A stretch of DNA of 43,561 nt from Octopus bimaculoides. Its lineage: Eukaryota. The translations under genes and the position numbers were made by a program. Below are positions 1,050 through 41,784 of this stretch, one piece after another. Position 1 is the first letter of the stretch; each line of letters starts with the position of its first letter. The notes under the pieces are model-generated. The model did no database searches, was not told the DNA's origin, and saw nothing but the letters and a program-made list of their open reading frames with translations. The stretch spans positions 43,759,169 to 43,802,729 of the forward strand of contig NC_068985.1 of assembly GCF_001194135.2 (NCBI RefSeq). The letters are read 5' to 3'.

Positions 1050-3100
1050 AGCTGAGATCCCAGAGAGGCAAACAAACGGCGTGTAGCATGAGCGGAGTTT
1101 ATTAAACACCACACAGGAAGTCAGATTGCAGATGCAACAGCAGCAAAGCGAGATGAAGATGTTGAAAGTCATCATCTGAGACGATGACTTTCCCTGGAGT
1201 TACCTTAAAAAACTAAGATTAGAAAACAGCAAGATAGAAGAAGACATACGAGAACATTTGAGATAACTGTTAATGAAGAAAGAGAAACTATCGGAGCGCG
1301 AGCAAAACAAAGTAGCAACACAACTGCAAAAGGAAACTAAAGAACACAGGTAAAGAAGAATAGGAGAAATGAGGTAAAGAATGACAGCAAGAGTTTCTAA
1401 TGAGAGTCTGGAACAAAGAAATATTTTTAAAATGAGGTTGTAAGACTAAGAGTTGGTACAAGATTACAGCATATTACTGAAGAACACAAAACAAGAAGAA
1501 TAGATAACTTAAGACAAAAAGCTTAAACGATATTATGAGATGATATTCAAGAACAGAGAAGTGCGAGGCATAGAAACGAAAGAATATGCGCCGGTGAAGG
1601 AAGAGAAAATGAAACAGATGATGATAGAAATGGCATATTTCACAATGGTTTCAAATTTTGGCACAAACTCAGCAATTTCGGGGAGGGAATAAGTCGATTA
1701 CATCGACCCCAGTGCTCAACTGGTACTTATTTCATCGACTTCGAAAGAATGAAAGGCAAAGTCCACCTCGGTTGAATTTGAACTCAGAACGCGAAGATGG
1801 ACGAAATGCCGCAAAGCATTTTGTCCGCCGCGCTAACGATTCTGCCAGCTCGCCGCCTTCAGTGGCATATTTCATAATGTTGAGAACAAGAAGTAAACAC
1901 GGCTTGACAGAATGCTGTACCTAAATAATTTTAACAGATTCTGAAAGAAATACTGCGCCAGCCAGGTCATTCCCATTATTCTTGGAATTATTACCATAAG
2001 TTTAAGAACAGCATTAGACTTTATATAGATCGGCACTGTGGTTTATTTCAATGGAAGCTCAAAATGTAAACCAAAATTGCTGGCCTCGTGCCTATTACTG
2101 AGAGGATTATTACTGTATGTAAAAAGCGTTACAAACTATGAAGATACTTCCACTTAAGACGGTATCGCTCATAACAATTTTAAAGCTGCAGCTGAAAATA
2201 GATATTTGCAAAATAAATACGGGGAAATAGGTGCGATGTATATCAGAAGTAGTAAAACTTGGGATATTTCTCTAACTGAGAGATCTGTTAACCATTATAG
2301 ACGTCAAAAATATACCGAGTGATCCTCTGTCCCTTCTAGCAATTTGAGCAGCATTTTATTCTGGAATTCATAAAAGAGTGGTAAAAAGAGCCCCCAAATA
2401 GCGCACAGCATGATAGTCATCAAACGCCTATTATTCACGGTCTATTCTGATACGACTTAGGATTACCGAGATGTACACTAATTTGTAATGATGACAGAGT
2501 AATGAAGTTCACGTGGAGAATGCTGTTGATGTTGGCATTAAAATACATTAATTGATTTGTAACGTCGCGCATCAGTGACATAGAAATTTTATATTATGAG
2601 ATTGCTGAGTATTAGCTCTCGTTTCATGATGGTCCCGGAGGTTCAGGTAAAACATACCCGTACAACATATAGTATATTAGTAGGTATGCGGTAAGAATGT
2701 TTTCTCTTGCATATGGTATTACTGTTGATTCGCTAAAGGGCAACATGATAATTCGCGTAAGGTTTCGTCTTCCCGTACCCAACCTAGAAAATTTTCAAAG
2801 AATAAAAAAATGCTACTCTGATGTTACTGTCTGAAGCGGCAGTGTTGTCTGTGGACGCTCCACATATAATGAACATTCCATCGAAAACAATAATGGGGGA
2901 AAATAATCTATTAGGAATAAACTTTCTTATTGTTTAATGAAACTTTTATCGAACAGTGTGCATAGTCCCAAGAACTTCCAACACAGACATAATAGATAAT
3001 TATATCAAACAATTATCATTTGAAAATATTGAAGATTATCAGACTCTTCACCAACATGATATCACAGTAATGCAGCATTCAGTGGTTGCCATAGATATCA
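1050..3100 (+). mobile_element. Highly decayed Helitron RepHel remnant (N-terminal E-x-R repeats plus PIF1-like helicase)
   Basis: Manual translation gives Walker A FHDGPGGSGKT (2622-2654), then ...YGITVDSLKG...RFRLPV, LLLYVKSVTNYED..DGIAHNNFKAAAE, IVPRTSNTDII and IRLFTNM, all matching Helitron helicase blocks. Region 1300-1650 has ETKEHR/EEHKTRR/QEQRSAR/ETDDDR repeats. Many stops and frameshifts. Confidence 0.8.
1646..1860 (-). mobile_element. tRNA-derived SINE (family S1) with 17-bp TSD
   Basis: Head GAAGGCGGCGAGCTGGCAGAA..GAGTTCAAATT, end AATTTGAAACCA. TSD TGGCATATTTCA(C/T)AATG at 1631-1647 and 1863-1879. Homologous copies elsewhere in the window. Confidence 0.9.
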
Positions 3101-4149
3101 ACTTAACTGTGTTTGCTCGCCGTTAGTTATTTCGAAGATGGGAGACCGACTGGCTGATGCTTTGTCCTTGATTTGGTTGGCGAGAGCCGAGTTATATTCT
3201 TTTCGAATTCCATCAGAACTCTGTTTGATTTTTAGCGCTAAACTGTTTGAGCGGAGAAAAGAGCACATATCTCAAGAACGTTTGAGATGGTGTTCTATCT
3301 GGTGTCATGATCTCCGGCACACTGACAGGCCAATAAATAGTGTGTTCAGGTGAAAATCGCATGCTCCAAATGTAGCTCACTCACAATAGTGAACTGAAAA
3401 TTAAGCGAAAGGGTTTCAAATCCCTACAGATGTATGGAAACTGTAAGTAAGGATTATGATTTAGTATAAACACTGAAATACCATTAAAAAATGACTGAAT
3501 CTAATGGTTTTTGCTTTAAGATGGAATAAAACATTTTTTTCTCACAGGTATAATATCGTTATATAAATTGTGTTTGTCAAATGTGAAAAGTAATATTATT
3601 ACGAGACTTAAAATAATATTTGCTTAATTACTTCATTATTTAGGATATTTAAATGAAGTAAGATTTTCCTGTGATATTTTTATTCTAGCAAAAATTGTGA
3701 CTCTTTCTGCGACATTTTTTTTATATTCCGTGACTTTATTTAACTTCTCAGTTGTAGATTCTAATCAAAATTCATTTACGGGTTTAATATCATATGTACC
3801 AAGATCCATAAATAGGTTTACCATTCACTTCAGATTAACTGAGACGATCTCGGTTTTCATCCTTTGTCTTGACATACCAGGCTGCTCAGTTTATCTCGGG
3901 AGAGTTTGAAACAGTGACGAAGTTTTAAAACTTCATGAGAATTTGAGAGATTATATTTCATCATTTTGGGACTTAAGTACTTAATCATACATCATAAATC
4001 GGTGACTAGAGTATATGTTACTATGTTATGGGCACAAGGCACCAGCAGTAAGGTAGTTGACTTGAGAGGGAAAGAGAGAGAGGGAGAGAGAGGGNNNNNN
4101 NNNNAGGGGGAGAGAGAGGGGGGGAGAGAGAGAGAGAAATACAAATAAT

Positions 4150-4920
4150 AAGGACAAAGAAAGAAACAAAGCTGATACTAAGACAAAAAAAGGGGAGTAA
4201 GTAAGACAGGGGTAGGTCAGGACACGTTACAATAGTAATGTAGTTAAAAAATAAAGGGTCCGAGTTTCCTTTGAAATAAACGGCACAAAATCAACAGTAC
4301 AACTGTAGAGAACTAACTTAACATCTTAATTTTAGGATGTCAACGATAATAGTTATTTTTAATACGCGCCTGGAAAATATTTTCTCCTCTATCTTCACAT
4401 GATGAAAATTACGATATTCTTTGGGGTATGAGAATAGCTTCGAAATACAATGGCTGTTGTTCAGATCCATGTCAGCTCTGGTCGTATGGATGGTCAAGGC
4501 TATTTCAGTCATGACCATCCTATCATTTATTCAGACTTGGTGTATCTAAGACTATATCATTTAACGTGTTCTTTGTTGTTGTTTCTGTTAAGAGCAGTCC
4601 TGATCCGAGGACAAAAAGGACATTAAGGAATAACGGTGATATAACAACACCGAACCCAATACAGAATTTCTTTTGCTGCCACCGTAACCGAGTCTGCCTT
4701 TACTTGTATTGACGTCGTTAACCACCAGCAAACCTGCTTTCGAAATAGACAGCCCCTTCAAACGAATTTTCACCACAAAGTTAAGTTCTAACGAGAGTAA
4801 AGTATATGACATCCGAGACTGCTCATTTGTGCTCTTAAGCTGAACAAACGATATGGGATAAAATATTTTTGCCTTTTGCTGAAATGACAAAGGACGGGCT
4901 CTTAGTAATGGGTAACGAGT
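4150..4920 (-). mobile_element. Older degenerate Tx1-like ORF2 C-terminal/3' UTR remnant (unit D)
   Basis: Minus frames give TVAAKEILYWVR and YRNFHHVKIEEKIFSRR, resembling VAIAEEAVWKTR and KVRLERRCLSEKMFNDRW of the adjacent element. Heavily decayed. Confidence 0.4.
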
Positions 4921-5156
4921 CTGATTTTTTTATTGCCCACTAGGGGCTAACATAGAGAGGACAACATAATCTAATTTTGAGGTCAGATGAAAACGTATGT
5001 TACAACATTGAAATACGATTAAAAATTAAATAAAAAACATATACACGGGTGATAGGCAACACAAGAAACAAAACAGATGGAGTGATGGTTGAGTTAAGCT
5101 CCTGACTCCACGAGCCCCAGTCCACCACTGGTACCGGTGATAGACCTTTGTCATGT

Positions 5157-8100
5157 TCACGTGGTTACATTCATACGCAACACTCGTACCACATACTTCC
5201 ATCTATCGTTAAACATTTTCTCTGACAGGCATCTTCTCTCCAGTCTCACTTTCCTTTTCAGATGAAAAGCGAAATATCTTTGCAGACCGAGGCCTGTCGT
5301 CATTCCTTTCATTCTCGTCTTCCATACCGCCTCTTCCGCGATTGCAACTACTATGAGAAAACAATTCTTACCTTCTTTCGTCAGGAAATCAGGTGGGTCA
5401 ATTTTTAAAATCGACTCAGACGATAGCTGTACTCTTCCTGTACCAGACAACAGATGTTCCGCATAAGCCCACACCTCCGACACCTCTGAACACTGAACAA
5501 TAGCGTGCAAGACGGTTTCCCTTTCCTGCCCGCATCTTGGACAGGTCGATGTGTTGCATTGACCATGCCTTGTGAGCTAATCCTGAATGGGCAAGGCTTC
5601 TCGGTAACATTGCCAGGTCAAAGACTTTTGGAAATTATCCAGTGTCTTCGGCTCGAATGTCAGATTCAACCTCGACCAAACCACTATAGAAAAATGCGGT
5701 TGAACCATCACCGCTGGCATTGCCCGAGCGACGGAATAGCAGGAGTGCTTTGCGATACTCTGTACGTCATGTACCCAACTTAGATCTTCGATAGCACTAG
5801 GCTTCCCGTTCACCGAAACTAGTGAACTTGGGAAACGTCCGTTTTGCCAGCGGAGACCACACCCGTTCACCATCCAAGAGGAGCCAAAGATGCCTCAACC
5901 TCAGCGCATGTTTGCACATCATCAACCAAAGCATCCATAGTCCCCCCTTTAACGGTTTTTGACAGCAGATAGAAGTCTCACAAGTGGTTTCGAGCCCTTC
6001 CACAAAAGCGAAAGAGCTGTCTTTCCAACTTGGTCAACCACGAATCTGGGCAAGGAACGACGGTTAGGCGGTAAGTGATGACCGATGCGAGGAACACATT
6101 GGTTACCTCCGCCCTTCTTTTCAGGTATAGTCCCCGCCCAGACCAGGTCTTGGTTATGTGGTCGACCCAGCTCGAAACCTCAGACCAGTTCTTTTCTACC
6201 TGGAGATCTGGGTCAAACCAGACTCCTAGCAACTTAACCGGGCCCTCCGTCCAACGTTCCACGACGCTGATNNNNNNNNNNNNNNNNNNNNNNNNNNNNN
6301 NNNNNNNNNNNNNNNNNNNNNNNNNNNNNNNNNNNNNNNNNNNNNNNNNNNNNNNNNNNNNNNNNNNNNNNNNNNNNNNNNNNNNNNNNNNNNNNNNNNN
6401 NNNNNNNNNNNNNNNNNNNNNNNNNNNNNNNNNNNNNNNNNNNNNNNNNNNNNNNNNNNNNNNNNNNNNNNNNNNNNNNNNNNNNNNNNNNNNNNNNNNN
6501 NNNNNNNNNNNNNNNNNNNNNNNNNNNNNNNNNNNNNNNNNNNNNNNNNNNNNNNNNNNNNNNNNNNNNNNNNNNNNNNNNNNNNNNNNNNNNNNNNNNN
6601 NNNNNNNNNNNNNNNNNNNNNNNNNNNNNNNNNNNNNNNNNNNNNNNNNNNNNNNNNNNNNNNNNNNNNNNNNNNNNNNNNNNNNNNNNNNNNNNNNNNN
6701 NNNNNNNNNNNNNNNNNNNNNNNNNNNNNNNNNNNNNNNNNNNNNNNNNNNNNNNNNNNNNNNNNNNNNNNNNNNNNNNNNNNNNNNNNNNNNNNNNNNN
6801 NNNNNNNNNNNNNNNNNNNNTTGCTAGCATCTTGGCCAAAATCTTCAACTCTGTGTTTAGCAGAGTGATGGGCCGGAAATTATCTATACAATCCTTCTTG
6901 TCAGGGTCCTTTCTGATCAGTGTCACCACTCCTCAGCGCACAGATTTAGGAATAAACCGATTCTGTTGCCACTTCTTGTACACACTGGCCAGCAGGTGCC
7001 CGAACAAGTTTGGCATACACTTATACAACTCGTAGGGTAGACCATCCAGTCCCGGTGACTTACCTACGCCACAGTCTGCTATAGCCTCAATTGCTTTCTC
7101 AGGTGTGATTGGCCCTTCACAAGACTCCGTATCCTGCCCAGAGTGGCGCGGTAGCCTGGTGAGGAAGTTCATTAGATCACTCCCACTATCCGGTTCATCA
7201 ACCCCACCGGAAAGCTGGGCGAAGTGCTCCTGAAAGGCTTCACATATCTCCTCGTGCTCATTTATCAACTCACCTTGATGGTTCACCAAAGATCGAACTG
7301 TGAAATTATTTCCGCGTTGAACTTCCACCACTCGGGCCCATCCAGCGGCCCTGATTCCCTCGCAACCCACTGCACGTAGTCTAACCCTGACAATGCACCC
7401 TATGTTCTTGGCTTCGTGGTGCTGTTTTAGTTCCAGTCTCTTCGCCTTCACCTGGGTTGAACTGCCAGTCCTCATGGTTTCCTCTAAAGCCTTAACTAAA
7501 CTCTGTTCCTGCCTACGTTCACTAGCCACTAAACCTATGATATATCTAATAAACTCGAATTTAATGGCTCGTTTGAGGGCATACCACCGTTTGTTATTAA
7601 TGATGGCTCCTGTTAACGCCCTCTGTATTAACTTAATCCACTTTCTGTACTCCTCAGTCGCCAAAAAGGGAAGTATTGAGTTTCCAGTAGCCAGATCCTT
7701 GACTATATACTTTATCTAGGTTCAACTCACAAGTGACCAACTTATGATCACTGTAGCTGACCAGATAAAACTGTGGACACTTAGCTATGTTCTTGTCTGC
7801 TATTCTAATTAAAATCTTATCCACAAGGAGTGTTCGGGTGTTCCATCCTATATGGATCTACTAGCTGAAAACGACTTAACAGTTCCCAGAAGCTAATATT
7901 ACTTCTATCTGGTCGCGAGCCAACACAATCTACGCGTGCGTCGCAGATTGTGTTAAAGTCTCCTAATAAAACTAGTGAATGTGACGTACCCAGAAACTTC
8001 TCTAGGTCACGAAAATACTCACTTTGACTGGAATTGGGTGCATAAATCGCAACCAGTCTGATCGTGTTACTACAACTAAATGTCAAGTCCATAACGACCA

Positions 8101-8376
8101 GCCTACCTTCTGGATCAGAAAGAAAAATAATCAACCTTTTCTCTGAAACCCGGTTTCTTTTTGATAGGGTTGACCTGGAGAAATGAATTTCTTGTAGCCT
8201 CCCAGCAACGGGAGCAGATCTCTTGGCTCCTTTAACCAGGTTTCTGTAGCTACAATAACATCCAAATTGCGTGACCTGATGTCATTTAGGAAGCGCCCTT
8301 GCTTCCAACTCGACGACAGGCCACGCACATTTAAACAACCAACGTGAACTGACATAAGTTTTACCTTTCTATTCAT
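5157..8376 (-). pseudogene. ORF2 (APE endonuclease plus reverse transcriptase) of unit C, frameshifted; RT core partly in an N-gap
   Basis: Motifs GCLNVRGL, VIVATETW, AIYAPN, LLGDFN, SDH, GYWKLN, KSPGLDGLPYELY, NFRPITLLNTELKILAK, VKLLGVWF and C-terminal ERRCLSEKMFNDRW. Confidence 0.93.
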
Positions 8377-8530
8377 TGGAAGGGGGTGAAGGGGTCTCCA
8401 CCTCTTCTCTTTTCCGGGCTCGCGGGACTGGAGGAGGTAGGCCCTCGAAAATTGTAGGTGAAAAATCTTTTCGTAGAGGGCCTACATCTTTTCTATAGTC
8501 ACTGCTTAGAATATTATAATTTAAGTCTAT

Positions 8531-9596
8531 TCAGTAACTGTCGTAGTTTATGTATTTATCGGATAATTCCTCAATTCGTTTGGCATTCTTAATAATCTTC
8601 AACCGATTTATTAGTGTATTGTTGTCTGTTTTTACCGCTACTAGGTTATCTTCTGTCTTTTTCCTCCTAACAACTTTTTTCTTGGTTTTCTTGTCAGCTA
8701 CCTTCGTTGGGGAGGTTGGATGGATTTTTCTTTTTCCATTATTCTCCCCTTGGTTGCTGCTTACGTCTTCCATTTCTTTTGCTTCTTTCTCTTCCTCCTC
8801 TTCATCTTCATCATCTTTCCGGGGAGGGTTGCATTCTGCGCATACGTGTCCCAGCTTTCCACATTTGAAGCACCACGATTTTCGGTCTTCCACGAACACT
8901 ATCAGACTCTCCTCCCCTATTTCAATAGTCTTTGGTATTTCTTCTAAAGTTTGTGGCTGTCTGTATTAACATGTTCAATGTCTGGCCTTGCCAGTTTTGT
9001 TTTTCCGTGACAGAGGCTTGGAGGAGTGTGATCTTCTTCAAGTCCACTGTCACAGCCGCCACCAGCCAGGCTGCATCCACTTCTTGAGGAATTTTAGTTA
9101 TTCTCACTTTGGAGGTTCTCCTCCCCCCATATACATTGGGGGGAGAATTACCTCGTCTGTTTTTAATGTTTCTATCGAATGGATTTGAGCCTTTTCTTCA
9201 CTCACCACTCGAACTTCCACTGTGTCAAATCGTTTGCCTCTCGTGTTCTTCAAACATTTCTATATTGTTTCTTCCTGCACTTTTTCTATTTTCTTTGTCT
9301 TAATATTAAACATTTTATATATAATTATTTTCCCTTTTTCGGCTTCCATTATTTTCTTTGGTGGAATTATTTCCACTTTTGTATCATCTTTTAAAAACAT
9401 TTTTATACTTTAAAAGTTCACTTTTCTCAGTTGAGATTTTCCTTGTTTTCCCCCCGGTTGCCATGGTGAAACTTTTCTTTTCAGTTGGAGTCACACTTAG
9501 CTCTCCACTTTTTACACTTGGGACATCAATATTCCTTTTCACACATATTTTTTTCTTTTTAAGGAGTTTTGTCTTCATTTTTTCTTGGCGATACAA
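8531..9596 (-). pseudogene. ORF1 (gag-like, single CCHC zinc knuckle) of unit C
   Basis: CFKCGKLGHVCAEC knuckle. Upstream blocks IIIYKMFNIK, FDTVEVR and RRTSKVRITKIPQEVDAAWLVAAV are homologous to units A and B. Confidence 0.85.
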
Positions 9597-9996
9597 CCGG
9601 AGATAAGACCGGTGAGACCGGTTAGATAGGCGAAAGAAATGGGAATTCTTTTTCGTAATCCATTACGAAAATTGGCGAACACGCCAACTACACAAAATTT
9701 TGTTCACAGGCTTATCGCCGCACAAAATTTTTTTTTTTCTTCACACAATTCAAGTAATTCCCTCCTCCCCGCGGGAGAATTAGTAATAAAATGCTTCAAA
9801 CAAGCAAAAAATAATTCAACAGTTCTAACAATGCAATAACTATAAATTCAACAATACTTTAACAATCTTACCTTATTAAACAGAGCCGAATATATCAAAA
9901 ACAAGCCAAACATAAAAAAAAACACATTCTTTTTGTCTTAGTAAAGTAGGAGTGTGCAAAGCTTTATAATTTGCAAGAGTGAATGAAAGCACTTTG

Positions 9997-11527
9997 TTTC
10001 TTTATTGCCCACAAGGGGCCAATGAAGAGGGGACAATACAAAGACATGTGGGGACATAGAACAAACGAAACAAAGTAAAAATATCAAAAACGTATGTTAC
10101 AAGATGAATGATAAATGAAAATGAAAAAAATGTAATGAAGCTACTCGGCCCCACCTAAACCTCGTTCCTTCTAAAATAGCTATCTTGTACTCTCTCATGA
10201 GTTCCATGTATTCCTTACAATCCAGCATCCCTTCTTTATCTATATTCACTCTCCAAATGGTGAATCCATACTTATACCTTTCTATATCTGCCTTCCGCTC
10301 CTCCGAAATCAACATAAATACTCCCTCTTCACATAATCCTCGTCCATTTTAATAAATGCTGTGTCCTTCCAATACCATGATTCTGCGAGCAGTTCCCGGT
10401 TTGAGTCATCTATCATGCACGCAAAGCAATTCTTTCGTTTGGCCNNNNNNNNNNNNNNNNNNNAATTGGTATTGTAGTTAGAACCGTACTGTTTTTGTTT
10501 TCCTTCTTCCACTTATTATTTTCCACGTTTCTTCCTTGGTCAATATTTCTTCCTCTTTTTCGGTCATCTCCACTGGTTCTTATGATTTCTCTGTTTATTC
10601 CTCCGTTGTTCTCTTGGGCGGTGAAGGACAGTCCACTCTAATGTGGTGTTTCTTGGCTACATTTATAACATCGAGGGATTCTGCCCTCCACCTTAACTCA
10701 TTTCCACTTCATCTAACAATCATTTCTGTCATTTTTTCCAGAGTTTCTATCGGTGCTTTTATCGTCATTTCTAACGTTTTTCCCTTTCACATTTCACAGT
10801 TTGTACCTGTGATCTAGAGCACCGTCATATCGTCCTCGTTTCCTTTGAGGACTGCAGTTGCTATCCAGGTCACATCTATTTCTGGTGGTATTCCTTCAAC
10901 ACTGACCTTTGCTGCACGTCTACCCATGTAGGTGGGTAACAGCACCATGTCCTCGTCTTTTACATTTTTTGCTGCGTGTCTTATTACATTTTCTTCCTTT
11001 CTAAATCTTACTTCTGCCGTTCCAAATCTTGCTCCTCTCTTGATATATACGATGTCGTGCCACAAGGGCCTCAACACCTTTACCACTTGACTTGTGGTCA
11101 CAATGTCAAGCTTTCCTGCCTTTATTGAGAAAGTCTTGTAAATAATCGTTTTTGTTCTGATATCTTTTAATATTTCCTTCGGAGGGGACAATTCTACGTT
11201 GAAACCTTTTTGAACTTTTCCATTTTCTTTAAATCTATTTCTTCCTGTTGTCTTTTTGCCACATCTGCAAATCTTTTCTCTCCTATAACTCTTAACAGTT
11301 CGTCTTCAGAAGTCGACAACTCAGACCCACTAAGTCTGAATAAAACATTTTCTTCTTATCCATGGCTAACTTTTCTCATAAGAGGAGAGAAAGCACAAAC
11401 TGCCACAAGGCAGCACAATTCAATAAACAGAGTATTTAAAAACACTTACACAAAAATCAAACACAAAAATTTAACACGTCTTAACAGCAGCAAAACGACT
11501 CACCAACCAAAAGTGAATGAAAACACC
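9997..11527 (-). mobile_element. ORF1-only Tx1-related element, unit B (about 1.5 kb, putative non-autonomous)
   Basis: Has the 5' motif, an ATG at 11363, the ORF1 homologue, a knuckle C-YK-C-SQKH-H-IRVD-C (one frameshift), a C-terminal CFAC/WKD domain and the 3' motif at 10001-10018. No EN or RT. Confidence 0.8.
10097..11363 (-). pseudogene. Extended ORF1-like protein of unit B (frameshifted)
   Basis: ORF-track pieces 10814..11191, 10309..10512 and 10097..10315, plus manually read N-terminus (YSDL.GSELSTSEDE) and knuckle. Confidence 0.75.
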
Positions 11528-11530
11528 GGA

Positions 11531-13274
11531 TTTCTTTATTACCCACGAGGGGCATACATAGACAGGACAACACAAGACATGTGGGGACATATAACAATTA
11601 AAATTAGAATTATGAAAAACATGGACGATAAATGATAATATGAAAAATGTGCCACCTACCACACCTCAACAGCATCATTTACGTCCTTTACATATCCAGT
11701 TAAAGTTGACCCCATATTGTTCCTCTAATTTCTCATTTTCTATCTCGTCCGGTACGTTCTTTATATCACATACCACCTCTCTATATCTCACTCCCTCTTT
11801 ACACTCTCTGATCATTTTCATTCTACACTCCGGCACCAATGCGCCTAAGACCATATTTTCTTTTTTATTTCCTTTCATGTTTATAACTTTCACATCCTTC
11901 CATTGCAACAATTTATTTTTCGCTTCCATTTTTACACCCTTAAACACAGCACAAGCATAACAAGTGGGAGGGGGCATTTTGTGTGTTTTTTTTGTATGAT
12001 TGTTGCTCTTTTTTTTTCTTTTCTGTGTCGGTGGGGAATGGGTAGCTTCGATGTATGTNNNNNNNNNNNNNNNNNNNNNNNNNNNNNNNNNNNNNNNNNN
12101 NNNNNNNNNNNNNNNNNNNNNNNNNNNNNNNNNNNNNNNNNNNNNNNNNNNNNNNNNNNNNNNNNNNNNNNNNNNNNNNNNNNNNNNNNNNNNNNNNNNN
12201 NNNNNNNNNNNNNNNNNNNNNNNNNNNNNNNNNNNNNNNNNNNNNNNNNNNNNNNNNNNNNNNNNNNNNNNNACTTAAACTGTTCTTTTCCCTCTTCCTC
12301 TGTTTTCTTTCAGTAATTTGCTATCCATCTTCCTCATTTCTGGTTCCTTCTCTGCTTTCTCTTGGGTTTGCTTATTTTTCAGAGGGCAGTCCGCTCTAAT
12401 GTGGCCCTTTTAGCCACATTTATAGCAACGAGGGATTCTGCCCTCAATCCACACTTTCATTATTGTTTCTCCGACCGTCACTGTTTGTGCAAGCTTCTAA
12501 ATTTTCTATCTTACTTTGTATTATAATTTCCAGAATTTTACCATGCCAATTAGTGGCTTCTGTTTCTGTGGCCTGGAGTACGGTGACCTCTTTCTCGCTT
12601 CCTAGAAGTACAGCCGCCGCCACCAAAGCCACATCTATTTCAGGGGAGATTCCCTCCACCCTGACCTTGGAAGTTCTTTTTCCAAGGTTTGTGGGTAGGA
12701 GGATTGCCCTTTCCGTTTTCATTGATTTTACAGAGTTATCTTTTGCTTTTTCTTTGTTCTTGAAATATACCTCAACAGTGCCGGATCTGGCAAGATACGT
12801 TATGTCTTGCCAGATTGGCCCTCAACGCCTTTTCAATTTCTCCTGTCTGTTCATTTTCTAATCTTTTCTCCTTGATACAATAAACTTTATACACAATTTT
12901 CTTTTCTTCCATTTTCTCTAGTATTTCTTGTGGTGGTGAAGTTTCACGTTACCACCTTTTTTTTTTTTTAACATTTTTTTCAAAGTTTTTAAAGTTTTTG
13001 AGGCTTACCTCTTTCTTTGACACTTCCGTCACTTCCTCAAAACTTTTCTCCTTTAAAACCTTGTCCATCTTCTTTACAGCTACCACAAACTCCTCTTCAG
13101 ACGACGACAGTTCCGAGTACGCCACTTCTGATTCACTTAAGTCCGAATAAGACGCAGCCATCTTTCCTCAAAATGTTGAGGGGCAGCACAACCACATAAA
13201 CTCACGTTTAAGAAACCACAAGGATTTTAACCAGAAAAACACTACACTGTACACCAAAAGTGTATGAAAAAACC
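11531..13274 (-). mobile_element. ORF1-only Tx1-related element, unit A (about 1.7 kb including a roughly 214-N gap)
   Basis: 5' motif at 13253-13274, ATG at 13161 (MAASYSDLSESE), knuckle EGRIPRCYKCG*KGHIRADC, C-terminal CYAC/WKD domain and 3' motif at 11535-11552. Confidence 0.8.
11675..13161 (-). pseudogene. Extended ORF1-like protein of unit A (frameshifted)
   Basis: ORF-track pieces 12949..13161, 12444..12722 and 11675..11977 align block by block with unit B. Confidence 0.75.
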
Positions 13275-13969
13275 TCTGGCAAGTGCATATTGCATTTTAT
13301 NNNNNNNNNNNNNNNNNNNNNNNNNNNNNNNNNNNNNNNNNNNNNNNNNNNNNNNNNNNNNNNNNNNNNNNNNNNNNNNNNNNNNNNNNNNNNNNNNNNN
13401 NNNNNNNNNNNNNNNNNNNNNNNNNNNNNNNNNNNNNNNNNNNNNNNNNNNNNNNNNNNNNNNNNNNNNNNNNNNNNNNNNNNNNNNNNNNNNNNNNNNN
13501 NNNNNNNNNNNNNNNNNNNNNNNNNNNNNNNNNNNNNNNNNNNNNNNNNNNNNNNNNNNNNNNNNNNNNNNNNNNNNNNNNNNNNNNNNNNNNNNNNNNN
13601 NNNNNNNNNNNNNNNNNNNNNNNNNNNNNNNNNNNNNNNNNNNNNNNNNNNNNNNNNNNNNNNNNNNNNNNNNNNNNNNNNNNNNNNNNNNNNNNNNNNN
13701 NNNNNNNNNNNNNNNNNNNNNNNNNNNNNNNNNNNNNNNNNNNNNNNNNNNNNNNNNNNNNNNNNNNNNNNNNNNNNNNNNNNNNNNNNNNNNNNNNNNN
13801 NNNNNNNNNNNNNNNNNNNNNNNNNNNNNNNNNNNNNNNNNNNNNNNNNNNNNNNNNNNNNNNNNNNNNNNNNNNNNNNNNNNNNNNNNNNNNNNNNNNN
13901 NNNNNNNNNNNNNNNNNNNNNNNNNNNNNNNNNNNNNNNNNNNNNNNNNNNNNNNNNNNNNNACATATA

Positions 13970-14190
13970 TATTTGTGTCTTTGTGTCTGTGTTTATTCTC
14001 CCCACCATCGCTTGACAACCAATGTTCCTGTGTTTATGTCCCTGTAACTTTGCGCTTTGGCAAAAGAGACTGATAGAATAAGTACCAGGGTTACAAAGAA
14101 TAAATCCTGGGATCGATTTTTTCGACTAAAAAGACGGTGCTCCAGCATGGCCGCAGTCAAATGACTGAAACAAGTAAAAGAATAAAAGAA
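13970..14190 (+). mobile_element. SINE family S2, 3' half (head presumably in the gap)
   Basis: Ends CAGCATGGCCGCAGTC...GAAACAAGTAAAAGAATAAAAGAA, the same tail as 41600-41784 and 18637-18840. Confidence 0.8.
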
Positions 14191-15194: not shown

Positions 15195-15335
15195 GTGCTC
15201 CATCTACCAAATCCATTCGCAGGGCTTTGGTCAGCCTGAAGCTATGGTAGGAGACACTTTCGCAAGGTGCTGCACAGTGGGCTTGAACTCAAGAGCAGAT
15301 GGTTGGGAAGCAAGCTTCTTACCACATAACCACAT
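15195..15335 (-). mobile_element. SINE family S2, tRNA-like head fragment
   Basis: Minus strand GTGGTAAGAAGCTTGCTTCCCAACC...GAGTTCAAGCCCACTG; homologous to 19330-19490 and 41387-41550. Confidence 0.75.
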
Positions 15336-18924: not shown

Positions 18925-19490
18925 CAAAAACACAATAACAAAAAAACAAAAAAACAACAAGGTGAGGACGTGATATGGATAGTATTATTGGACGCTCAGG
19001 AAAGGAAAGAGAGAGTGTATGACGTTTCGGGCGTAGCCCTTCGTCGGAAAGATGGAAAGTTCGGAGAATGGAAGAACGGAGAAAGAGGAAAATGNNNNNN
19101 NNNNNNNNNNNNNNNNNNNNNNNNNNNNNNNNNNNNNNNNNNNNNNNNNNNNNNNNNNNNNNNNNNNNNNNNNNNNNNNNNNNNNNNNNNNNNNNNNNNN
19201 NNNNNNNNNNNNNNNNNNNNNNNNNNNNNNNNNNNNNNNNNNNNNNNNNNNNNNNNNNNNNNNNNNNNNNNNNNNNNNNNNNNNNNNNNNNNNNNNNNNN
19301 NNNNNNATATATATATATATACACACGATGGCGTGCGACAGATTTCTTTCAGATTGCGTCTACCAAATCCTCTCACAAGGATTTGGTCAGCCTAGAGCTA
19401 TAGTAGAAGACGACCAAGATGCCAGACGGTGGGACTGAACCCGGAACTATGTGGTTGGGAAGCAGGCTTCTTACCACTCAGCAACGCTTG
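18637..19490 (-). mobile_element. Full SINE S2 (head, internal microsatellite, tail) interrupted by a PLE-like repeat and a gap
   Basis: Head at 19330-19490 and tail at 18637-18840, with the same architecture as 41387-41784. Confidence 0.8.
18921..19094 (-). mobile_element. Penelope-like terminal-repeat fragment with hammerhead-like core
   Basis: Minus strand CCGACGA A GGGC-TAC-GCCC GAAAC GTC (19021-19047), translating as SDEGLRPKR, typical of PLE ends. Confidence 0.6.
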
Positions 19491-21854: not shown

Positions 21855-22071
21855 TTGGTTTCAAATGTTGGCACACGGCCAGCAATTCTGGGAGAGGGGG
21901 TAAGTCGATTATATCGACCCTAGTGCTCAACTGGTACTTATTTGATCGACCCCAAACGGATGAAAACGCAAAGTTGACCCCGGTGGAATTTGAACTCAGA
22001 ACGTAAAGACAGACGAAATGCCGCTAAGCATTTTGCCCAGTGTGTTAATGATCTTGCCAGCTTGCTGCCTT
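21855..22071 (-). mobile_element. SINE S1
   Basis: Collinear with 1646-1860 over its full length. Confidence 0.9.
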
Positions 22072-41386: not shown

Positions 41387-41784
41387 AGGCGCAAACATGG
41401 TTGTTTGGTTAAGAAGCTCGCTTTGTAGCCACGTAGTTTACATTCAGTCCCACTGCGGGGTATCTGGATAAATATCTGCTTCTATAACCTCGGGCAGGTC
41501 GGCCAATACCTTGCGAACTACTTTGGTAAGCGGAAACAGTATGAAAGCTTGTCATATAAATATGTATGTTTGTATGTATGTATGTATGTATGTTTGTCCC
41601 ACCCATCACTTGATAACCGGGGTTGGTTTATTCACGTCCCCGTAACTTAGCAGTTCGGCATAAGAGACCGATAGAATAAGTACTAAATTTTAAAATTAAG
41701 GACAAGAGTCGATTTGTTCCACCAAAACCCTTCCAAGAGTGCTACAGCATGGCCGCAGTCCAGTGACTGAAACAAGTAAATGAT
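41387..41784 (+). mobile_element. Full SINE S2 (head, internal TATG microsatellite, tail)
   Basis: Collinear with the other S2 heads and tails in the window. Confidence 0.85.

What the first reader, a model, noticed from the sequence alone, without database searches (positions are those of the whole stretch)
4925..13274. Flush head-to-tail array of three 5'-intact Tx1-clade elements: candidate self-targeting retrotransposon system
On the minus strand the order is A (13274-11531), B (11527-9997), C (9992-4925). At both internal junctions the AATAAAGAAA end of one unit is followed within a few bases by the conserved 5' motif of the next (A|B ...AATAAAGAAATCC GGTGTTTTCATTCACT; B|C ...AATAAAGAAACAAA GTGCTTTCATTCACT). 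The units are diverged paralogues, so this is not a simple tandem duplication. Many Tx1-clade elements are known to be target-sequence specific. The inference is that this family targets the 5' terminus of its own relatives and builds arrays of autonomous plus ORF1-only members, reminiscent of HeT-A/TART/TAHRE arrays but at an interstitial site.
Basis: partly seen in the sequence, partly recalled or inferred. Interest (0 to 1): 0.85.

Follow-up and report, generated by a model that had tools for sequence, protein, structure and literature searches.

The report
End-to-end array of three LINEs
Three decayed, only distantly related LINE-type retrotransposons (one full-length, two short ones lacking the enzyme gene) sit joined tail-to-head within 3-4 bases in a cephalopod-like genome; the arrangement is real, but whether it comes from self-targeted insertion or from the reverse transcriptase jumping between RNAs cannot be decided here.

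Summary
On the minus strand, units A (13274-11531), B (11527-9997) and C (9992-4925) are joined as ...GGGTAATAAAGAAA-TCC-GGTGTTTTCATTCACT and ...GGGCAATAAAGAAA-CAAA-GTGCTTTCATTCACT. This composite pattern has 0 matches in 100 shuffles. Both junctions lie inside contiguous sequence, not across gaps.

The units are not duplicates: their ORF1 proteins are 42-50% identical. C is a broken ORF1 + APE + RT + zinc-finger LINE of L1/Tx1 type. A and B have ORF1 plus a small Cys-rich ORF and no ORF2. All three share about 45-126 nt of 3' tail and a roughly 19-nt head.

A related element on public contigs (L009, assembled in at least 3 sequencing runs) also shows an ORF2/3'-tail followed within about 200 nt by an ORF1-bearing unit. 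Tandem joining therefore recurs in this group.

Four of seven 3' tails abut unrelated DNA (C's flank resembles the head with P about 0.6), so strict targeting of the 5' end is not supported.

My best reading (confidence about 0.4) is serial end-to-end template jumping during one integration event. Tx1-clade membership could not be tested. Only a genome-wide census of junctions can decide.

The parts
11531..13274 (-). Unit A. The head GGTTTTTTCATACACT lies at 13274-13259. ORF1 runs from the ATG at 13161 to the assembly gap (12272-12059) and is broken by about 5 stops or frameshifts; its CCHC knuckle is at about 12427-12386. A small intact 100-codon Cys-rich ORF lies at 11977-11675. The 3' UTR and tail end in GGGTAATAAAGAAA at 11531. 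There is no ORF2.
11528..11530 (-). A|B junction filler TCC (TCCG if the head is taken to start at GTG).
9997..11527 (-). Unit B. The head GGTGTTTTCATTCACT lies at 11527-11512. ORF1 runs from the ATG at 11363 to the gap (10463-10445) and is broken about 10 times; its CCHC is at about 10670. The broken homologue of the small Cys-rich ORF lies at 10443-10100. The tail ends in GGGCAATAAAGAAA at 9997. There is no ORF2.
9993..9996 (-). B|C junction filler CAAA.
4925..9992 (-). Unit C, an autonomous-type LINE pseudogene. The head GTGCTTTCATTCACT lies at 9992-9978 and the 5' UTR is about 530 nt. ORF1 lies at about 9464-8531 and includes a CCHC knuckle. ORF2 lies at 8376-5157: APE at 8376-7820, the RT N-terminal part at 7661-6936, the RT core hidden in gap 6820-6272, the RT C-terminal part at 6271-5981, and the zf-RVT-type CX2CX8HX4C at about 5545. 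The 3' UTR (5156-4925) ends in GGGCAATAAAAAAA. There are many frameshifts and stops.
4885..4924 (-). Right flank of the array (TCAGACTCGTTACCCATTACT...). It is not a LINE head; its resemblance to the head motif is no better than random windows (P about 0.6).
13275..13300 (-). Left flank of the array (ATAAAATGCAATATGCACTTGCCAGAG, the last G being ambiguous with the head). It is not a 3' tail, so the array has three units. It may share a 4-5 nt target-site duplication, CAGA(G/C), with the right flank; this evidence is weak. The gap begins at 13301.
32276..32335 (-). A fourth copy of the LINE-type 3' tail (…ACCCTTGTGGCCAATAAAAGAA). It sits at the end of a PIF1-like helicase pseudogene fragment and is followed by (ATT)n, not by a head.

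Best explanation
The array is a product of the retrotransposition machinery joining complete RNA-derived units end to end. The most likely route is a single target-primed reverse transcription event. In that event the C-type reverse transcriptase copied a C RNA to its very 5' end and added a few untemplated bases. It then jumped onto the 3' tail of a B RNA, copied that RNA fully, and jumped again onto an A RNA. A and B are non-autonomous partners that qualify as acceptor templates because they carry the same 3' tail. The array landed at an ordinary genomic site.

What is shown: the structure, the shared tails and heads, the fillers, and the recurrence of tandems in relatives.

What is inferred: the jumping itself, trans-mobilisation through the shared tail, and the idea that the conserved head is a transcription-start module (it contains TCATTC).
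For: 1. Both internal junctions join an exact 3' tail to a complete head with 3-4 extra bases. This is the signature of end-to-end template jumping. R2 proteins extend full-length cDNA onto further RNA molecules bearing the 3' UTR, and head-to-tail repeats are seen in cells (PMC11371274).
2. The three units are different families that share only the tail (A/B 75% over 126 nt; C 82-84% over 40-45 nt) and a roughly 19-nt head. A shared tail is what acceptor choice by the RT would require.
3. The array's outer right flank is not head-like. Related tails also end at unrelated DNA (L004, L008, 32276). The endonuclease therefore does not need a head as its target.
4. A count of units that must be 5'-intact 'by luck' favours jumping. 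Jumping needs one such unit (A). Insertion upstream of heads needs two (A and B). Insertion into tails needs three (B, C and the downstream unit of L009). In Drosophila, tandems made by repeated insertion are mostly tail-to-internal (PMC5932611).
5. A related C-type pair is also tandem in L009/L010/L011, which were assembled from at least 3 runs.
Against: - No direct evidence shows that the three units share one age. ORF1 disruption counts differ (A about 5, B about 10, C about 4 per roughly 0.9 kb).
- The single target-site duplication expected around the whole array is at best 4-5 nt, CAGA(G/C), and only 27 nt of left flank are read.
- Two successive jumps plus the L009 case would need a high jump rate in vivo. 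Such a rate is documented for R2 in vitro but not for L1/Tx1-type elements in genomes.
- The head is conserved across families whose 5' UTRs are otherwise unalignable. That would also suit a DNA target.
- In L009 the head directly after the tail is only weakly recognisable (P about 0.05).
Confidence: 0.4

Rival explanations
1. Sequential self-targeted insertion. The endonuclease, or the integration complex, prefers the DNA just upstream of the conserved head of a resident relative. B would have been inserted in front of C, and A in front of B.
For: - Tx1-clade elements are known for target preferences, including for other transposons such as Tx1D, Mariner-N4_AMi and LTR elements (PMC4494074).
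- The head is conserved (17/19 between B and C) although the rest of the 5' UTRs do not align.
- The fillers are 4 nt at both junctions if the head starts at GTG, which would fit a fixed nick position.
- Three of the four heads seen are occupied by an upstream tail.
Against: - Four of seven tails abut DNA with no head, and C's flank is no more head-like than random windows, so the specificity is not strict.
- Fillers sit at what would be the newcomer's 3' junction, which is normally precise in target-primed reverse transcription (established knowledge).
- Both upstream units are 5'-intact, which this model does not require.
- No empty or partly filled site is available.
Confidence: 0.25
2. Insertion into the A-rich 3' tail of a resident copy (tail targeting). 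The L1-type endonuclease nicks the T-rich bottom strand of ...AATAAAGAAA, so that newcomers (B, then C) are added downstream of residents. The fillers are the usual extra bases at 5' junctions.
For: - The tails are A-rich, and L1-type endonucleases favour such sites (established knowledge).
- Fillers at 5' junctions are common.
- The A|B filler TCC and C's right flank TCAGAC share TC, as a target-site duplication would.
- Flanks after tails often start with T(C).
Against: - It needs three of three newcomers (B, C and the downstream unit of L009) to be full-length, whereas such tandems are usually tail-to-internal (PMC5932611).
- No tail-to-internal junction was seen among the seven tails.
Confidence: 0.1
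3. A composite element. A tandem that arose once by any route is transcribed as a read-through RNA ending in a valid tail and is then retrotransposed as a unit, so the window holds one copy of an A-B-C composite family.
For: - The tail AATAAAGAAA ends only 4 nt after AATAAA, so termination must depend on downstream sequence and read-through is likely.
- The L009 junction was recovered identically in several runs.
Against: - L009 is a C-type|C-type pair, not A-B-C.
- No second copy of the A|B or B|C junction was found in any data reachable here.
- The first tandem still has to be explained.
Confidence: 0.12
4. An assembly artefact or a tandem duplication followed by divergence.
For: The scaffold has nine gaps, three of them inside the array.
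Against: - Both junctions lie inside contigs.
- The units are too diverged to collapse or to be mis-joined through shared k-mers.
- With 42-50% ORF1 identity and different gene content, recent duplication is excluded.
- An independent tandem exists in other data (L009).
Confidence: 0.03

Closest known systems
Target-specific Tx1-clade LINEs (Tx1L in Tx1D, Tx1-Mar in Mariner-N4_AMi, Keno in U2 snRNA genes)
   Same: Unit C has an APE + RT LINE architecture of L1/Tx1 type, with a CCHC-bearing ORF1. A LINE sitting at a fixed point of another mobile element is known for this clade (PMC4494074).
   Different: Here the neighbour is a relative's terminus, not a DNA transposon or an RNA gene. More than half of the tails seen lie at unrelated sites. 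Clade membership was not tested.
Drosophila telomeric HeT-A / TART / TAHRE arrays
   Same: Both are head-to-tail mixed arrays of an RT-encoding element and gag-only partners that share 3' features.
   Different: The array here is interstitial: there are no telomeric repeats and there is flanking DNA on both sides. C encodes an endonuclease. The array is short and decayed, and no host function is implied.
Template-jump concatemers of non-LTR reverse transcriptases (R2 in vitro and PRINT head-to-tail repeats; L1 chimeric retrocopies)
   Same: In both, an exact 3' end is joined to a complete 5' end with a few extra bases, and the acceptor is defined by the 3' UTR (PMC11371274).
   Different: The known cases involve R2 (RLE-type) or U6/L1 chimeras with truncated partners. 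Here three full-length heterologous elements of an APE-type family are fixed in a genome.
Non-LTR tandem dimers by double insertion at one target (R1 arrays, jockey, DMRT1B; McGurk and Barbash 2018)
   Same: Both are tandem LINE copies generated by transposition rather than by recombination (PMC5932611).
   Different: Those junctions usually carry a target-site duplication and a 5'-truncated downstream copy of the same family. Here the downstream copies are 5'-intact and belong to different families.
HAL1 (half-L1) and HeT-A: ORF1/gag-only non-autonomous LINE derivatives
   Same: A and B have ORF1 but no EN/RT, and they share the 3' end with an autonomous type (PMC5753468 for HAL1).
   Different: A and B are not simple deletion derivatives of C, since ORF1 identity is only 42-48%. 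They also carry an extra small Cys-rich ORF that has no match in Pfam or PDB.

Membership tests
APE-type LINE of the L1/Tx1 group (unit C) | ORF2 with an N-terminal apurinic-like endonuclease | tested here: met
   The piece 8140-7820 hits Exo_endo_phos at E=5.8e-4, which is below Pfam's cut-off because the gene is broken. Intact relatives P0030 and P0109 carry Exo_endo_phos above the cut-off.
APE-type LINE of the L1/Tx1 group (unit C) | Reverse transcriptase domain related to L1 ORF2p | tested here: met
   The RT N-terminal piece matches human L1 ORF2p structures as its only meaningful PDB hits (E about 1e-5). It has 734 relatives in the representative library, and the full-length ones carry RVT_1. 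The catalytic core itself lies in gap 6272-6820 and is unread.
APE-type LINE of the L1/Tx1 group (unit C) | C-terminal Cys/His motif (zf-RVT) and an ORF1 with a CCHC knuckle | tested here: met
   zf-RVT hits at E=2.2e-4, and CX2CX8HX4C can be read at about 5545. The ORF1 knuckle CFKCGKLGHVCAEC hits zf-CCHC weakly.
Tx1 clade in the strict sense | RT phylogeny places the element with Tx1L/Keno rather than with L1 proper | not testable with these tools
   No labelled Tx1 or L1 reference set could be fetched, and the relatives found carry no clade names. The literature lists 'L1-Tx1' families in octopus genomes (PMC13282606, PMC8967140), so membership is plausible.
Tx1 clade in the strict sense | Insertion confined to one target sequence | tested here: not met
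   Three of seven 3' tails abut a head (A|B, B|C, L009). Four abut unrelated DNA (C, L004, L008, 32276), and C's flank resembles the head with P about 0.6. The sample is small and the window was chosen for its array.
Telomeric retrotransposon arrays (HeT-A/TART/TAHRE type) | Arrays at chromosome ends, with attachment independent of an endonuclease | tested here: not met
   The window has no telomeric repeats. There is non-LINE DNA on both sides, and C encodes an APE domain.
Telomeric retrotransposon arrays (HeT-A/TART/TAHRE type) | Head-to-tail mixed arrays of RT-encoding and gag-only elements | tested here: met
ORF1-only non-autonomous LINE derivatives (HAL1 type) (units A and B) | ORF1 present, EN/RT absent, 3' end shared with an autonomous element | tested here: met
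   tblastn with C's ORF2 pieces finds nothing in A or B. ORF1 is homologous at 42-50%, and the tails are shared. One caveat: each unit holds an assembly gap (214 and 19 N), which is too short by estimate to hide an ORF2.
ORF1-only non-autonomous LINE derivatives (HAL1 type) (units A and B) | Derived from the autonomous partner by loss of ORF2 | tested here: inconclusive
   A and B are distant from C. They also have a small extra ORF (A 11977-11675 intact; B 10443-10100 broken) that is absent from C. Their true autonomous partner was not found.
Single-event template-jump concatemer | Exact 3' end joined to a complete 5' end with 0-5 untemplated bases | tested here: met
   The fillers are TCC and CAAA.
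Single-event template-jump concatemer | One target-site duplication around the whole array and equal age of all units | tested here: inconclusive
   Only CAGA(G/C) is shared by the two outer flanks, and only 27 nt of the left flank are read. Disruption densities differ but the counts are small. No family consensus is available.

The most novel reading that the evidence does not exclude
A cephalopod L1/Tx1-type LINE lineage and its two-ORF non-autonomous partners habitually build interstitial head-to-tail arrays. This would happen because their integration machinery recognises element termini: either the conserved head as a DNA target or the shared tail as the acceptor for RT jumping. Each unit's 3' region would then be placed to influence transcription of its downstream neighbour. 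That would be an internal-chromosome counterpart of the Drosophila telomere arrays.
Probability: 0.25. Interest if true: 0.7.

Novelty: new variant of a known kind. Interest (0 to 1): 0.45.

Why it matters
If terminus-directed joining is a regular property of this lineage, it would give a natural system in which LINE arrays grow away from telomeres. It would also bear on how telomere-building retrotransposons could arise from ordinary LINEs, and on how LINE tandems seed satellite DNA. If the cause is template jumping, the array is a rare fixed in-vivo record of serial end-to-end jumps by an APE-type LINE reverse transcriptase. That property is of practical interest for RNA-templated gene insertion. 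Either way, the two short elements with ORF1 plus an unknown Cys-rich ORF are a new kind of partner worth cataloguing in cephalopod repeat libraries.

Tried and rejected
- Known RNA families (ribozymes at 5' ends, snRNA or tRNA targets): Rfam found nothing at gathering level and only noise at E<=5. There are no tRNAs.
- The idea that the head is part of a host RNA gene or satellite target was rejected. The array's outer flanks lack the motif, and the window has no further copies apart from one unrelated 11-mer.
- Terminal repeat (LTR-like) structure: the first 150 nt and the last 200-250 nt of the units show no significant similarity (z<=3.2).
- A conserved tail hairpin as the RT recognition element: RNAalifold gives only -3.2 kcal/mol and few covarying pairs. 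I make no claim on this.
- Collecting genomic copies:
  - The ORF1 search found nothing.
  - DNA pattern scans of metagenome and viral collections gave one bacterial chance hit.
  - An exact look-up of A's small ORF found nothing.
  - Extending the L009 locus failed, because all contigs break at the same ends.
  - The distant relative L002 has neither these termini nor an array.
- Naming the clade through relatives' names: only 'hypothetical' or 'unnamed' proteins came back, from Argonauta hians, Acanthosepion pharaonis and Lepidochelys olivacea.
- Structure of A's small ORF: the AlphaFold2 model has pLDDT 58, which is too poor for a fold search. There is no PDB or Pfam match.
- The species of the Logan runs SRR11869384-94 could not be identified.


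Full report
**What the window is.** The 43.5-kb window is eukaryotic, AT-rich (about 36% GC) and full of microsatellites, SINE-like repeats and nine N gaps. The nearest named relatives of its LINE proteins come from cephalopods: Argonauta hians at 42% and Acanthosepion pharaonis at 28%. It is therefore most likely an octopod-type genome. There are no telomeric repeats.

**Checking the observation.**
- A|B is ...CCCCTCGTGGGTAATAAAGAAA TCC GGTGTTTTCATTCACTTTTGG.
- B|C is ...CCCCTTGTGGGCAATAAAGAAA CAAA GTGCTTTCATTCACTCTTG.
- C ends ...CCCCTAGTGGGCAATAAAAAAA and is followed by TCAGACTCGTTACCC.
- A begins GGTTTTTTCATACACTTTTGG, 27 bases after a gap.

The combined tail-filler-head pattern occurs twice, against none in 100 shuffles. 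The tail occurs three times against none expected. The head core occurs three times against 0.06 expected, and the third copy lies in unrelated sequence.

**Gaps, tested first.**
- Both junctions lie inside contiguous stretches: 10464-12058 and 6821-10444.
- The gap in C's RT (6272-6820) is bridged collinearly by related public contigs. L009 has 570 nt between anchors against 567 in the window. L001 has 447 against 583. Order and size are sound, but the frame cannot be known.
- The gaps in A and B lie at the same homologous point, just after a stop that closes ORF1 in both (..GKRTV* and ..KTVRF*). Nothing outside the window spans them.
- The distance from CCHC to the Cys motif is 465 nt in A (214 of them N) and 242 nt in B. 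The A gap is probably overestimated, and neither gap is likely to hide an ORF2.

**Anatomy of unit C.** C is a decayed autonomous-type LINE with these parts:
- a 5' UTR of about 530 nt;
- ORF1 with a CCHC knuckle;
- ORF2 with an APE domain (Exo_endo_phos, E=5.8e-4);
- an RT whose N-terminal part matches human L1 ORF2p structures (E about 1e-5);
- a zf-RVT type C-terminal motif;
- a 230-nt 3' UTR.

Intact relatives in the protein library have the full APE + RVT_1 + zf-RVT architecture.

**Anatomy of units A and B.**
- Each has an ORF1 homologous to C's (A/B 50% identical; A or B against C 42-48%).
- Each has a small Cys-rich ORF: 100 uninterrupted codons in A (11977-11675) and a broken copy in B. 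This ORF has no match in C, Pfam or PDB.
- Neither shows any trace of ORF2.

**What the units share.** At the DNA level the three units share only two things:
- the tail: A/B 75% over 126 nt, and C 82-84% over the last 40-45 nt;
- the first roughly 19 nt: B against C 17/19.

All three units are pseudogenes. This rules out tandem duplication.

**Related sequences from elsewhere.** Only the C-terminal ORF2 piece retrieved close relatives (50-80% identity). All are on short Logan/ENA contigs from runs SRR11869384-94, whose species is unknown.
- L009 is the same locus as L010 and L011, which are 99.95-100% identical and come from at least three runs.
  - It carries an ORF2 3' half and a 3' UTR whose tail ends at about position 2850. 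That end is set by its distance from the conserved CAGATCAG anchor shared with L004 and C.
  - About 200 nt further on there is an ORF1 with a CCHC knuckle, an inter-ORF region and an ORF2 start, 73% identical to C's.
  - L009 is therefore an independent tail-to-head tandem of two C-type elements. The head directly after its tail is only weakly recognisable (P about 0.05), so 'flush' is not proven for it.
- Three other tails end at unrelated DNA: L004/L005, L008 (minus strand) and the window's own fourth tail at 32276.
- C's right flank resembles the head no better than random windows (P about 0.6).

In total, three of seven tails abut a head. That is far above chance for random insertion, but far from strict target specificity.

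**Mechanism.** Four routes would give this picture:
2. serial end-to-end template jumping in one TPRT event;
3. insertion into a resident's A-rich tail;
4. retrotransposition of a read-through composite RNA.

The literature supports the building blocks. Tx1-clade elements can target other transposons (PMC4494074). Repeated insertion makes LINE tandems in Drosophila, though mostly with 5'-truncated downstream copies (PMC5932611). R2 proteins jump from full-length cDNA to further RNAs bearing the 3' UTR and give head-to-tail repeats (PMC11371274).

I prefer route 2 (confidence about 0.4) for three reasons:
- It alone makes complete internal units obligatory. One unit must be intact by luck under route 2, against two under route 1 and three under route 3.
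- It explains the 3-4 nt fillers, the heterologous partners linked only by the tail, and the ordinary outer flank.
- It does not need an endonuclease that is specific in some insertions and unspecific in others.

Four points count against it:
- equal age of the units is unproven;
- the whole-array target-site duplication is only CAGA(G/C);
- a high in-vivo jump rate would be needed;
- the conserved head could equally be a DNA target rather than a start-site module (it contains TCATTC).

Route 1 keeps about 0.25, route 3 about 0.1, route 4 about 0.12, and artefact about 0.03.

**Comparison with known systems.**
- The array works like the Drosophila HeT-A/TART/TAHRE arrays in composition, but it is interstitial and its RT element has an endonuclease.
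- A and B resemble HAL1 or HeT-A as partners lacking EN and RT, but they are not deletion derivatives of C and they carry an extra ORF.
- Membership in the Tx1 clade could not be tested for lack of labelled references. Only L1/Tx1-type architecture is shown, and octopus genomes are reported to hold L1-Tx1 families (PMC13282606, PMC8967140).

**Verdict.** The self-targeting interpretation is possible but is neither the only nor the best-supported reading. I rate it a new variant of a known kind and of moderate interest. A genome-wide census of tail and head flanks, unit ages and orthologous empty sites would settle the mechanism.

Noticed in passing
window 32276-34700 (-): A PIF1-like helicase pseudogene fragment, probably Helitron-derived (PF05970, E=2.8e-13 on one piece), ends in a ~60-nt copy of the LINE 3' tail (P<1/4000 against random windows) and is followed by (ATT)n. 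It is either a severely 5'-truncated LINE copy or a template-switch chimera.
   Followed up: partly
window 11675-11977 (-) and 10100-10443 (-): A has an uninterrupted 100-codon Cys-rich ORF (MPPPTCYAC...WKD...), and B has a broken homologue. In both, it follows a stop that ends ORF1 and an assembly gap at the same position. There is no Pfam or PDB match, and the AlphaFold2 model is poor (pLDDT 58). The units may therefore be two-ORF elements rather than ORF1-only.
   Followed up: partly
L004 1143-1157: The 3' UTR of a related element contains GTGCTTTCATTCAAT, a 14/15 match to the head motif, about 130 nt before its 3' end. The 3' UTRs of A and B also carry TTTTCAT-type runs. No longer 5'/3' similarity was found.
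   Followed up: partly
L009 2851-2920: Two successive weak matches to the head module follow the upstream tail: TTCATAGCAC...GTGAGT, then GGTCTGTTTCATATCC...GGTGAGTC. This may be a duplicated 5' terminal module.
   Followed up: partly
window 1680-1860, 21891-22072, 26217-26397 (inverted); 13996-14181 and 41594-41783; 15203-15325 and 19359-19477: There are several dispersed short repeats, SINE-like and 75-91% identical between copies. One copy lies directly beyond the gap upstream of unit A.
   Followed up: no
L009, L010, L013 contig ends: All Logan contigs of this locus, from different runs, break at the same two positions. This suggests repeat boundaries in the assembly graphs, that is, many copies of the flanking LINE parts in that organism.
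   Followed up: no
protein P0017 (Lepidochelys olivacea, 1555 aa): A turtle predicted protein matches the RT N-terminal piece in four separate stretches. It may be a read-through of tandem LINE fragments.
   Followed up: no
window gaps 4095-4104, 17632, 24100-24326, 37925: Several assembly gaps are bordered by long microsatellites ((GA)n, (AC)n, (AT)n). This is the probable reason for the breaks.
   Followed up: no
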